DNA from: Podarcis gaigeae
Lineage: Eukaryota
Length of the DNA: 64,000 nucleotides
Reading direction: 5' to 3' (one strand)
Assembly (NCBI GenBank): GCA_964106915.2
Contig: OZ066915.1
Shown here: positions 25,744 to 28,747 of the stretch, in pieces
Numbering within the stretch: the first letter of the stretch is position 1
How the letters are laid out: every line of letters begins with the position of its first letter
Made by a program: the position numbers and the translations under genes
Notes under the pieces: generated by a model
What the model saw: only the letters and a program-made list of their open reading frames with translations
What the model was told of the DNA's origin: nothing
Database searches by the model: none

Positions 25744-25794
25744 TTCTGAAGCAATTCTGTTTTAGGGTGGTGGCATGGAATTAGTGTTGCCTCG
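25744..25794 (+). promoter_or_regulatory. Candidate editing-site complementary sequence (ECS) for A-to-I editing of the IQ-domain exon
   Basis: 25744-25782 pairs ungapped with 28638-28676 (28 Watson-Crick, 7 G-U, 4 mismatches). 25786-25794 pairs with 28621-28629. Confidence 0.85.
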
Positions 25795-28616
25795 GGTCAA
25801 CTTGATTCCCCTTCTTTTTATTGAAATACAGACACATGCTTCAGAATAGCGAGCCGTGCCTTCCTAAATTAAGCACATGGAGAGCATTTGTTGAGTGTGC
25901 ATCTAGAGAATAAACCATAATACATTTTCCTCTACAGAGTGCAATTAAAGGTTCAGCTCCATTTCATTGCTGCTTTCAAAGTGAATATTGATTTTCCATT
26001 TGCATAGACAACAAAGTACAGTGAACTTGTCTAGAGAAAAAGAATAGATAATGCCACTAAAATGCAGAAAACAGAACACTGCCAAAGAGGAAGTCTTTCA
26101 CAGCTTTAGGCAAATTGACGTGAAAAGGGAATAGACATCTTTGCAACTATTCATGCCTGGAAGTTGACATACAGGAAAACATACATGGAAATGTAATGTT
26201 TCATTAAAAACACAAGATAGGAAAGCTGCAAAGTAAACAACAATGTGAAGAAGACTTTAAGAATTTTGGTTAGTAGGAGAAGTGTAAATACTCCTAAATA
26301 AATAAATAAAATTTATTTAATTTTTAATGTATTGCAAAGGTTCCAGGATTATAAAGAAATGCATTATATAAACCAAGGTTTTTTCACAAACTTACATGAT
26401 AGGTCAGATTCCTGCATTCACTTAAGTATTATCTTTCAAACAGGATGTTATAGTTAAGAAAAAGCCAAATCCCTGTTTTTTTGTGATAAGTAGACTTAAT
26501 AAAGGAATATTGAATCTAGCAAGATTAATCATTGCTGACCGTAAAACCATTTCCTTAATTTACTCATAATTGCCAAGAGGTTTAAAATGTCAAATTACTT
26601 GCAAATCCTCAGGTTCAGTTTAACACTGATTAATTAACACTTCTAATATATGATGGAAACAGGAAGAAAAGTCACTTAAGTACAGATTCCTTTCTTTTAC
26701 CCCAAGGTTTTATCTAAATTCCCCATTCTTTAATCTTCAGAGGCCACTGAAGCCCATCTGCCACCCTCCTGTCTTCTCCCCAAACTTGTTTTGCTGAAAT
26801 TCGTTCCCTTAGGGTTTTTCTTTTACGTTTATTTCCACTCTGTTTAAAGTATGATCACTTCTGCTCCACGGCTTTCCTTCACATATCTAGTTATGTTTGT
26901 CTTTCTCAAAAGTCTGGACAAATTTTGTACCCATGGCTGTCCATGAAATATATTGTGGGTATGTCCCTTTTGCACCTAGCTTTTTAACTACATCCAGGAA
27001 CTTGCAAACAAAGCTGCTTTGCAGATGTGAATTGTGTGTATGCCCACATTTCACATGCATATATGGTGCAACCCCCACCCCAACTTATGGTACAGATAAC
27101 TCACATCTTACGCTTATTTAACTTACAAGATTGCAGCTTTGGCTAACAAAAAAGCTTGTTGGTCTTCCCTCCCAGCTTTTAAGACTTGATCCTGAGTACT
27201 GAAGCCCCTAAACTTGCATTGTAATCAATGGAGGTTTATAGACCATGTATCCTTTAATAAGGCATTTGTTACATGGTGAGAGCAGTCTCAATGATGCTAT
27301 TTAAGAGTCGGAATGGAACAGACAGGGCTCCCAACCAAACTACTTCAAGTCTTTTTGTTTCCTGTTTTCTTTCATAAGATATCCTTTAACATCTTCTAAC
27401 ATAACACATACCATGCCAAATCCTATCATGCCCTACCTGTTCTGGTATATGGTCAATTTCAGGGTTTATTGTTTAAAGCTATCTACAATTGAATAATTCA
27501 GAATTGCAGATAATGTAAATGAATTAGTTTTGACACAGAGACCTCTTTTAAATATAAAATCCATAGTTGATACACATAGGTAATTGAAACTGACATTTTA
27601 AAAACATATATTCCAGTGAAGTGCTGTGCCATTGCATATATCCTTATCTGGCATTAAGTCTCTTTCAATCCAGGTGGGCTTATTTCTGAGTAGATATATA
27701 TAGGATTGCACTACCCACAGCTTTTTCCTCCTCCCTCCTTAAACCAGTACAAAATACAAGGAAAAGAAACACAGTGTTCTGTTTTGGAACTGTTCTAATA
27801 AAAGGAAACTACTAAAAGATATTTCACTAAATTGCCAATAATAGCAAATGTAGTCCGATAATTAACAATGTCTGCTCATCGTGCTTTGTCTTTTTTAAAT
27901 AACCTAGCAGTATTAATACTGTCAGATAAATGTAAAAGCTAATGCATGCTGGAAAGCATCTGCTGGAAACACTTAGTCTTGATATGAGCACTTCACAATT
28001 TACCTGCCTTATTAATGATCTTACGTTCTATCTTTGCTGTTATTTTGGAACAAATTACTGCCAAAAGAGAGTATTTGCCCCCAAACTCTGGTTTCTAATG
28101 CCTGATATTTTACTTAATATGAATATTGCCTGCTAGGTGTTCATGGAGTGAGATAATTTATATGCCACTTTAATAGGTCAGACAGAAACAATAATAATTA
28201 GATATATATGAATTCACTATGGTGATAATTTACTTGAAAGGCAGCAAATATGAAAAGGCCCTCCTATTATAGTTTTTATAACACTCTGGTTCAAACTGAT
28301 CAAAGTTTGCATTTTCAGAGTCATGTAGACATTTGCATTTTAAAAGATAATCTTACCTCTTTGAACTTTAATAAATTAGCATCTTTTCCTTTCTTAGGAA
28401 ATAGTTCACCTATCAACTGCTTCTACTGCCTAGTCTTGTTTGCCTGCTAAAACTGCTTTATGCTAGATTTAGTCTGCCTTATTATCAGCAGCAGCAACAA
28501 CAAAAACCCTTGTGCCATTGGCACTGTCACATTTTTTCCTGATTTGGATAAGAGTTTATATTGGTACTAATGAAATGTGCTGACTTGGGAGAGATCTGTC
28601 TGGTCTGTTCATTTAG

Positions 28617-28747
28617 ATGATGAGGTAACCGTGGGGAAGTTCTATGCCACCTTCCTGATACAGGACTACTTTAGGAAATTCAAGAAACGGAAAGAACAAG
28701 GACTGGTGGGGAAACATCCTGCAAAGAACACCACAATTGCACTACAG
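28617..28747 (+). CDS. CACNA1D: CACNA1D exon 41 (calmodulin-binding IQ domain): [44 protein letters not shown]
   Basis: atttag|AT...CAG|gtgatt, 131 nt. IQDY and NTTIALQ fit Cav1.3 rather than Cav1.2 (IQEY). Confidence 0.99.

What the first reader, a model, noticed from the sequence alone, without database searches (positions are those of the whole stretch)
25744..28676. Long-range RNA duplex over the IQ codons: candidate A-to-I recoding system in a reptile
Seen: intronic ttctgaagcaattctgttttagggtggtggcatggaatt (25744-25782) pairs without gaps to exon 41 nt 28638-28676, with 28 Watson-Crick, 7 G-U and 4 mismatches. Most deviations are G-U compatible, as expected for selection on RNA rather than DNA pairing. 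The Tyr-codon A (28668) faces a C (25752), the A:C mismatch ADARs favour, and the Ile A28660 and Gln A28662 lie in the helix. A second 9-bp helix joins 25786-25794 to 28621-28629. Established: in mammalian brain ADAR2 edits ATA-CAG-GAC-TAC (IQDY to M/R/C variants) through an ECS in the preceding intron, which weakens calcium-dependent inactivation. Inference: the system predates the mammal-reptile split and operates here, possibly biased to the Y site. In an ectotherm the G-U-rich duplex could make editing temperature-sensitive, which is speculative.
Basis: partly seen in the sequence, partly recalled or inferred. Interest (0 to 1): 0.85.

Follow-up and report, generated by a model that had tools for sequence, protein, structure and literature searches.

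The report
Lizard calcium-channel RNA editing duplex
An intron segment of the lizard CaV1.3 calcium-channel gene folds back onto the exon for its calmodulin-binding site; it is the same RNA-editing guide already known in mouse and human, with editing also known in zebrafish, so its presence in a reptile is expected.

Summary
Intron 40 of CACNA1D (25744-25782) pairs gaplessly with exon 41 (28638-28676): 28 Watson-Crick, 7 G-U, 4 mismatches, far above chance. It is almost certainly the orthologue of the published ADAR2 editing-site complementary sequence (ECS): 38/39 identical in two mammals, 37-38/39 in six teleosts; synonymous sites of the paired codons are nearly frozen. Not found in the papers read: a 10-12-nt exact complement (25837-25848) of the ECS 5' end, kept from carp to mammals, predicted to hold the ECS until exon 41 displaces it; weak in three of eleven loci. 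The scan had not noted this on other DNA (look-up covers this genome only).

The parts
24317..24418 (+). CACNA1D exon 40 (pre-IQ); 5' boundary of the ECS-bearing intron 40 (24419-28616)
   Evidence: splice signals and translation; aligned to the same exon in mammal, sauropsid and teleost loci
25632..25861 (+). Conserved intronic block that contains the ECS and its flanking elements
   Evidence: 78-85% identity to mammalian loci L001/L004; part of a 75%-identical, 726-column match (window 25183-25869) to sauropsid-like locus L010
25688..25699 (+). Short upstream element conserved from teleosts to mammals; partner or ligand unknown
   Evidence: alignments A1, A2; also in arowana and carp
25725..25737 (+). 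Amniote-only distal arm predicted to pair with exon 41 at about 28698-28709
   Evidence: pairing probability about 0.9 in the lizard; 9-nt deletion in L001; not conserved in fish
25739..25742 (+). Conserved 4-bp extension of the duplex, pairs with 28678-28681
   Evidence: kept in all 9 sets; probability about 0.8-0.9 in 9 of 10 joint folds
25744..25782 (+). ECS core (orthologue of the mouse/human CaV1.3 ECS); pairs with 28638-28676
   Evidence: 38/39 identical in L001/L004, 39/39 in L010, 37-38/39 in teleosts
25786..25794 (+). Second helix, pairs with 28621-28629 at the start of exon 41
   Evidence: mammals show two pairing-preserving one-sided changes
25837..25848 (+). Exact reverse complement of the ECS 5' end (25742-25753): candidate competing 'latch'
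   Evidence: 10-12 nt exact match in 9 of 11 loci with the window counted; 11 nt or more in 1 of 392 background stretches; P(pairing) 0.93 when the ECS region folds alone, 0.00 once exon 41 is present
28573..28616 (+). Conserved 3' end of intron 40 (branch-point-like motif, weak pyrimidine tract, AG)
   Evidence: alignment A3; paired with ECS-side sequence in most teleost folds, partly in the lizard, not in mammals
28617..28747 (+). CACNA1D exon 41 (IQ domain); first 23 codons nearly free of synonymous change
   Evidence: 42/43 identity to human CaV1.3; synonymous differences 0-2 of 23 paired codons vs 11/39, 21/37, 18/37 in unpaired exon 41 plus exon 40, Fisher p = 0.02, 2e-6, 0.002
28660..28660 (+). 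Predicted I-to-M editing site (ATA to ATG); expected major site
   Evidence: position; editing inferred from mouse and zebrafish
28662..28662 (+). Predicted Q-to-R editing site; expected minor
   Evidence: not significantly edited in the mouse minigene (PMC6101491)
28668..28668 (+). Predicted Y-to-C editing site (TAC to TGC), opposite C25752
   Evidence: mismatch invariant across species; edited in mouse and zebrafish

Best explanation
This is the lizard orthologue of the vertebrate CaV1.3 ECS. In the CACNA1D pre-mRNA the intron-40 segment pairs, 2.9 kb downstream, with the 5' two-thirds of exon 41 and forms an imperfect duplex of about 50 bp (computed here). Before intron 40 is spliced out, neuronal ADAR2 binds it and deaminates A28660 (Ile to Met), A28668 (Tyr to Cys) and, weakly, A28662 (Gln to Arg). 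This is shown in mouse; I/M and Y/C editing is shown in zebrafish; for the lizard it is inferred. The recoded IQ domain binds calmodulin less well, which slows calcium-dependent inactivation but lowers open probability (established in mammals). Expected rank in lizard brain: I/M above Y/C, both well above Q/R.
For: Pairing far above chance. Same intron, same partner, similar distance (2.9 kb here; 3.5 kb in L001/L004; 3.7 kb in mouse), same length and four interruptions as the mouse ECS (PMC6101491). ECS nearly invariant across mammals, a sauropsid-like locus and teleosts including carp and arowana. Among orthologues 6 of 7 variable pairs in the two helices keep or gain pairing; the one loss is terminal. 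Synonymous sites frozen only in the paired codons. Editing measured on both sides of the lizard lineage (PMC9371748, PMC8096273). ECS deletion abolishes editing in mouse.
Against: No edited IQ variant among 237 fetched IQ-bearing proteins, most of them read from genomic DNA, so a weak test. No two-sided compensatory change was seen; the exon side is held by coding. I could not align to the mouse ECS itself (figure not held); the mammalian loci are unnamed species.
Confidence: 0.92

Rival explanations
1. The duplex forms, but its main selected role in lizards is to slow or gate splicing of intron 40 by covering the 3' splice-site region; recoding is secondary.
For: Helix 2 reaches to four bases from the acceptor; the last 45 nt of intron 40 are conserved from fish to mammals; in most teleost folds the pyrimidine tract is paired with ECS-side sequence, and partly so in the lizard. 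Editing correlates with exon 43 splicing in mouse (PMC12340395).
Against: The pairing across the splice site is absent in the mammalian, arowana and paralogue folds. ECS-deleted mice have normal Cacna1d mRNA level and C-terminal splicing (PMC9371748).
Confidence: 0.04
2. The duplex is intact, but editing is low or absent in this lineage because of trans factors (ADAR2 level, SRSF9 repression); the structure persists for another reason.
For: No direct evidence of editing in a reptile was obtained, and no paper on it was found. SRSF9 suppresses editing of the intact duplex (PMC6101491).
Against: The lizard ECS shows no decay, unlike the teleost paralogue L012, which has 9 mismatches; editing occurs in both zebrafish and mammals.
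Confidence: 0.03
3. Chance complementarity, or a decayed DNA-level inverted duplication of the exon.
For: The G-U excess alone is not significant (p = 0.09).
Against: Score far beyond shuffles, the antisense strand and other exons; conserved across bony vertebrates with pairing-preserving changes and synonymous constraint.
Confidence: 0.01

Closest known systems
Mouse/rat/human Cacna1d exon 41 ECS edited by ADAR2 (Huang et al. 2018, PMC6101491; Zhai et al. 2022, PMC9371748)
   Same: Gene, intron, partner exon, about 40-bp imperfect duplex with four interruptions, I and Q adenosines in the stem and the Y adenosine in a bulge; ECS 38/39 identical to two mammalian loci.
   Different: Distance 2.9 kb rather than 3.5-3.7 kb; lizard has G-C where mammals have G-U at 25769/28651 and keeps the terminal pair 25782/28638; editing not yet measured.
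Zebrafish cacna1da I/M and Y/C editing (PMC8096273, PMC4670233)
   Same: Two sites 8 nt apart as here; the carp duplex has the same 28/7/4 counts and differs from the lizard ECS at one position.
   Different: The passages I read report editing levels, not the intronic partner. Percomorph-like loci and arowana have G at the 25754-equivalent, which closes the A.C mismatch; teleost folds extend over the 3' splice site.
Other intronic-ECS recoding substrates of ADAR2, such as GRIA2 Q/R and R/G or GRIK2 Q/R (from memory)
   Same: Exon-intron duplex edited before splicing, with strong local sequence conservation.
   Different: Different genes and sites; ECS downstream of the exon in GRIA2 and upstream here.

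Membership tests
CaV1.3 IQ-domain ECS / ADAR2 recoding system | Host gene is CACNA1D and the exon encodes IQDY | tested here: met
   42/43 identity to human CaV1.3, IQDY not IQEY; exon order mapped with fetched CaV1 proteins
CaV1.3 IQ-domain ECS / ADAR2 recoding system | About 40-bp imperfect duplex between exon 41 and a segment of the preceding intron, kilobases upstream | tested here: met
   compared with the description in PMC6101491
CaV1.3 IQ-domain ECS / ADAR2 recoding system | I and Q adenosines in the stem, Y adenosine in a bulge | tested here: met
   against PMC6101491
CaV1.3 IQ-domain ECS / ADAR2 recoding system | Sequence orthology of the intronic segment to the mammalian element | tested here: met
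   38/39 identical in mammalian loci L001 and L004 at 3.5 kb; the mouse sequence itself was not available as text
CaV1.3 IQ-domain ECS / ADAR2 recoding system | Substitutions preserve pairing; synonymous sites constrained | tested here: met
   6 of 7 variable pairs preserved, all one-sided; Fisher p 0.02 to 2e-6; no two-sided compensation seen
CaV1.3 IQ-domain ECS / ADAR2 recoding system | A-to-G differences at the I/M and Y/C sites in neural RNA | not testable with these tools
CaV1.3 IQ-domain ECS / ADAR2 recoding system | Editing depends on ADAR2 and on the ECS | not testable with these tools
   needs a minigene or knock-out; shown for mouse in PMC6101491 and PMC9371748
Rfam-curated RNA families | Match at gathering score | tested here: not met
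   no match in the window; a contiguous model is not expected to catch arms 2.9 kb apart

The most novel reading that the evidence does not exclude
The CaV1.3 ECS carries an ancient intronic latch. The segment 25837-25848 pairs with the ECS 5' end (the part that faces the Y and D codons) as soon as it is transcribed, and exon 41, arriving 2.9 kb later, must displace it from the more open 3' part of the ECS. Latch release would set the timing, the level or the I/M-versus-Y/C ratio of editing. For: 10-12-nt exact complement in the lizard, L010, two mammals, three percomorph-like fish, L011 and carp; 11 nt or more in 1 of 392 background stretches; it sits in one of only three blocks shared by fish and tetrapods; P 0.93-1.0 alone in seven loci. 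Against: P 0.63 in L004 and 0.24 in L010; only 6 exact nt in arowana and 7 or fewer in the paralogue L012, although the motif core persists there, so it could be a protein-binding motif; it is fully displaced at equilibrium.
Probability: 0.3. Interest if true: 0.55.

Novelty: new member of a known kind. Interest (0 to 1): 0.3.

Why it matters
As a reptile copy of a system already measured in zebrafish and mammals it mainly fills a phylogenetic gap and gives exact positions for a simple test in lizard brain. It also shows that the intronic partner itself, not only the editing, is nearly invariant across bony vertebrates; the papers I read aligned it only among mouse, rat and human. The candidate latch would matter more: CaV1.3 editing changes with learning and with splice choice, and a conserved competing hairpin would be a cis element that could tune it, testable with an existing minigene assay.

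Tried and rejected
Edited proteins: none with M, R or C variants among the fetched IQ-bearing proteins; weak, because most are genomic reading frames. Contigs of P0001 and P0191 were not fetched because they could be human; loci L001-L012 had no Alu hallmark words and were not taken for human; L013 and L014 are named fish assemblies. The spliced model was searched exon by exon by reference; the joined step was left out. Other exons: no second ECS-like partner for 12 other exons. The palindrome 25735-25750 as a hairpin: rejected as a main structure (P 0.14 or less); its 5' arm is explained by pairing with 28678-28681. The ECS as a cryptic exon: no support; one candidate AG is lost in L010. Temperature sensitivity and Y bias: rejected as unsupported. 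Rfam: no match. Paper searches for lizard or reptile CACNA1D editing and for a competing structure found nothing relevant; the library lacks most subscription papers.

Full report
Setting. The window holds the 3' half of CACNA1D (CaV1.3) on the + strand. Exons were mapped one by one with fetched CaV1 proteins, from the alternative pair at 2794 and 3195 to the last coding exon ending at 54995. Exon 41 is 28617-28747 and matches human CaV1.3 at 42 of 43 residues, with IQDY rather than the IQEY of CaV1.2. Exon 40 is 24317-24418, so intron 40 is 4198 nt. The host is probably a squamate: a 360-nt repeat occurs four times and resembles the Sauria SINE (from memory), and intron sequence aligns over 650-730 columns at 75-78% to two sauropsid-like loci but only over short blocks to mammals. 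The species was not identified.

The observation. The pairing is as described: 28 Watson-Crick pairs, 7 G-U pairs and 4 mismatches without gaps, A28668 opposite C25752, A28660 and A28662 paired, and a second 9-bp helix. It is the best partner of exon 41 in 64 kb by RNAduplex (-81.2 kcal/mol; best unrelated place -67.8). A gapless 39-nt score gives 27.5, against 19.5 for the next place, 16.5 on the antisense strand, at most 19.5 in 40 shuffled windows and 15-19 for twelve other exons.

Conservation. Proteins read from genomic exon-41 frames led to contigs holding both arms: mammals L001, L002 and L004 (species unknown, no Alu words), teleosts L003, L007, L008 and L011, arowana L013, carp L014 and a teleost paralogue L012; L010 (sauropsid-like) holds the ECS only, L005 and L006 the exon only. 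The ECS core is 39/39 identical in L010, 38/39 in the mammals and 37-38/39 in the teleosts, 1.0-3.5 kb upstream of the IQ codons. Among orthologues seven pairs vary in the two helices; six keep or gain pairing and the seventh is the terminal pair. All changes are one-sided. One of the seven comes from pairing L010 with L005, which may be different species. The paralogue has 9 mismatches, a natural picture of decay. The 23 paired codons differ synonymously at 0-2 positions, against 11/39, 21/37 and 18/37 for unpaired exon 41 plus exon 40 (Fisher p = 0.02, 2e-6, 0.002). Protein constraint cannot explain that; RNA pairing can.

What is known. Huang et al. 2018 (PMC6101491) describe a 40-bp duplex with four bulges between mouse exon 41 and a sequence 3700 nt upstream, the I and Q adenosines in the stem and the Y adenosine in a bulge; deletion abolishes editing and SRSF9 represses it. 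Zhai et al. 2022 (PMC9371748) report conservation of the editing from zebrafish to humans, 45% I/M and 29% Y/C in mouse brain, and less Ca2+ influx with editing. Zebrafish brain shows 57% I/M and 41% Y/C (PMC8096273 supplement). I-to-M is also the commoner event in mouse clones (PMC12340395). I found no paper on a reptile.

Y-site bias: the C.A mismatch is invariant across species, carp has the lizard's 28/7/4 counts, and I/M exceeds Y/C in mouse and zebrafish. Temperature: the two mammalian duplexes carry 8 G-U and are slightly weaker than the lizard's (-42.5 vs -44.2 kcal/mol at 37 C), and joint folds keep all parts of the lizard helix at probability 0.97 or more from 15 to 42 C. Editing could still vary with temperature through the enzyme or transcription rate, but nothing in this sequence points to it.

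Mechanism. Shown here: pairing potential, orthology, selection on pairing. Taken from mammals: ADAR2 action before splicing, neuronal restriction, weaker calmodulin binding, slower inactivation with lower open probability. Inferred: editing in lizard neurons with I/M above Y/C and little Q/R.

Beyond the finding. The duplex extends by four conserved pairs (25739-25742 x 28678-28681) and, in amniotes, by a looser distal helix. Only two other short blocks are shared by fish and tetrapods, at 25688-25699 and 25829-25848. The second contains an exact 12-nt complement of the ECS 5' end (25837-25848 to 25742-25753); it is 10-12 nt in nine of eleven loci, and 11 nt or more arises in 1 of 392 background stretches. 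Folded alone, the ECS region closes this helix with probability 0.93 in the lizard and 0.97-1.0 in L001 and five fish loci, 0.63 in L004 and 0.24 in L010; with exon 41 present it is fully displaced. It is degenerate in arowana and in the paralogue. A co-transcriptional latch is the most novel reading (probability about 0.3); a protein-binding motif is the alternative. I did not find it in the papers read.

Limits. Contigs that might be human (P0001, P0191) were not fetched. The joined, spliced model was not searched. The look-up of earlier findings gave one unrelated note in this window and nothing by words; it covers this genome only.

Verdict. A real and well-supported element, a new member of a known kind, expected from published conservation. 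Interest 0.3, most of it from the candidate latch.

Noticed in passing
window 25754 / 28666: The ECS adenosine opposite C28666 is a genomic G in L003, L007, L008, arowana and the paralogue, and A in tetrapods, carp and L011. It may be an intronic editing site whose edited state is hard-wired in some fish.
   Followed up: partly
window 28573-28616: The last 45 nt of intron 40 are conserved from teleosts to mammals. In most teleost folds they pair with sequence 3' of the ECS and cover the pyrimidine tract; partly in the lizard, not in mammals.
   Followed up: partly
window 25688-25699: A conserved 10-12-nt block upstream of the ECS resembles the downstream element at 25837-25844 and contains YGCY (MBNL-like, from memory); no partner found.
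   Followed up: partly
L012:930-1000: A teleost CACNA1D paralogue keeps a recognisable but decayed ECS (9 mismatches of 39) with exon-side changes; some other paralogue proteins (P0048, P0053) have lost the conserved intron end. Possible loss of editing after genome duplication.
   Followed up: partly
window 612-641: 30-nt microexon candidate (10 residues) with canonical AG and GTAAGT, noted earlier by the scan as hair-cell-type exon 30a; splice signals and frame checked only.
   Followed up: partly
window 2794-2877 and 3213-3296: Two paralogous 84-nt exons, the mutually exclusive exon 31/31a-type pair.
   Followed up: no
window 6381-6744, 38611-38972, 46951-47313, 48174-48516: Four copies of a 360-nt SINE-like repeat, 75-91% identical; resembles Sauria SINE from memory.
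   Followed up: no
window 25196-25222: A 27-nt intronic block 93% identical to mammalian L001/L002, about 550 nt upstream of the ECS.
   Followed up: no
window 33868-34017: 150-nt run of N (gap or mask), left untouched.
   Followed up: no
L009, L010: Vertebrate DNA in the metagenome collection: L009 is the same fish contig as L007; L010 (Ga0065711) is sauropsid-like, probably host DNA.
   Followed up: no
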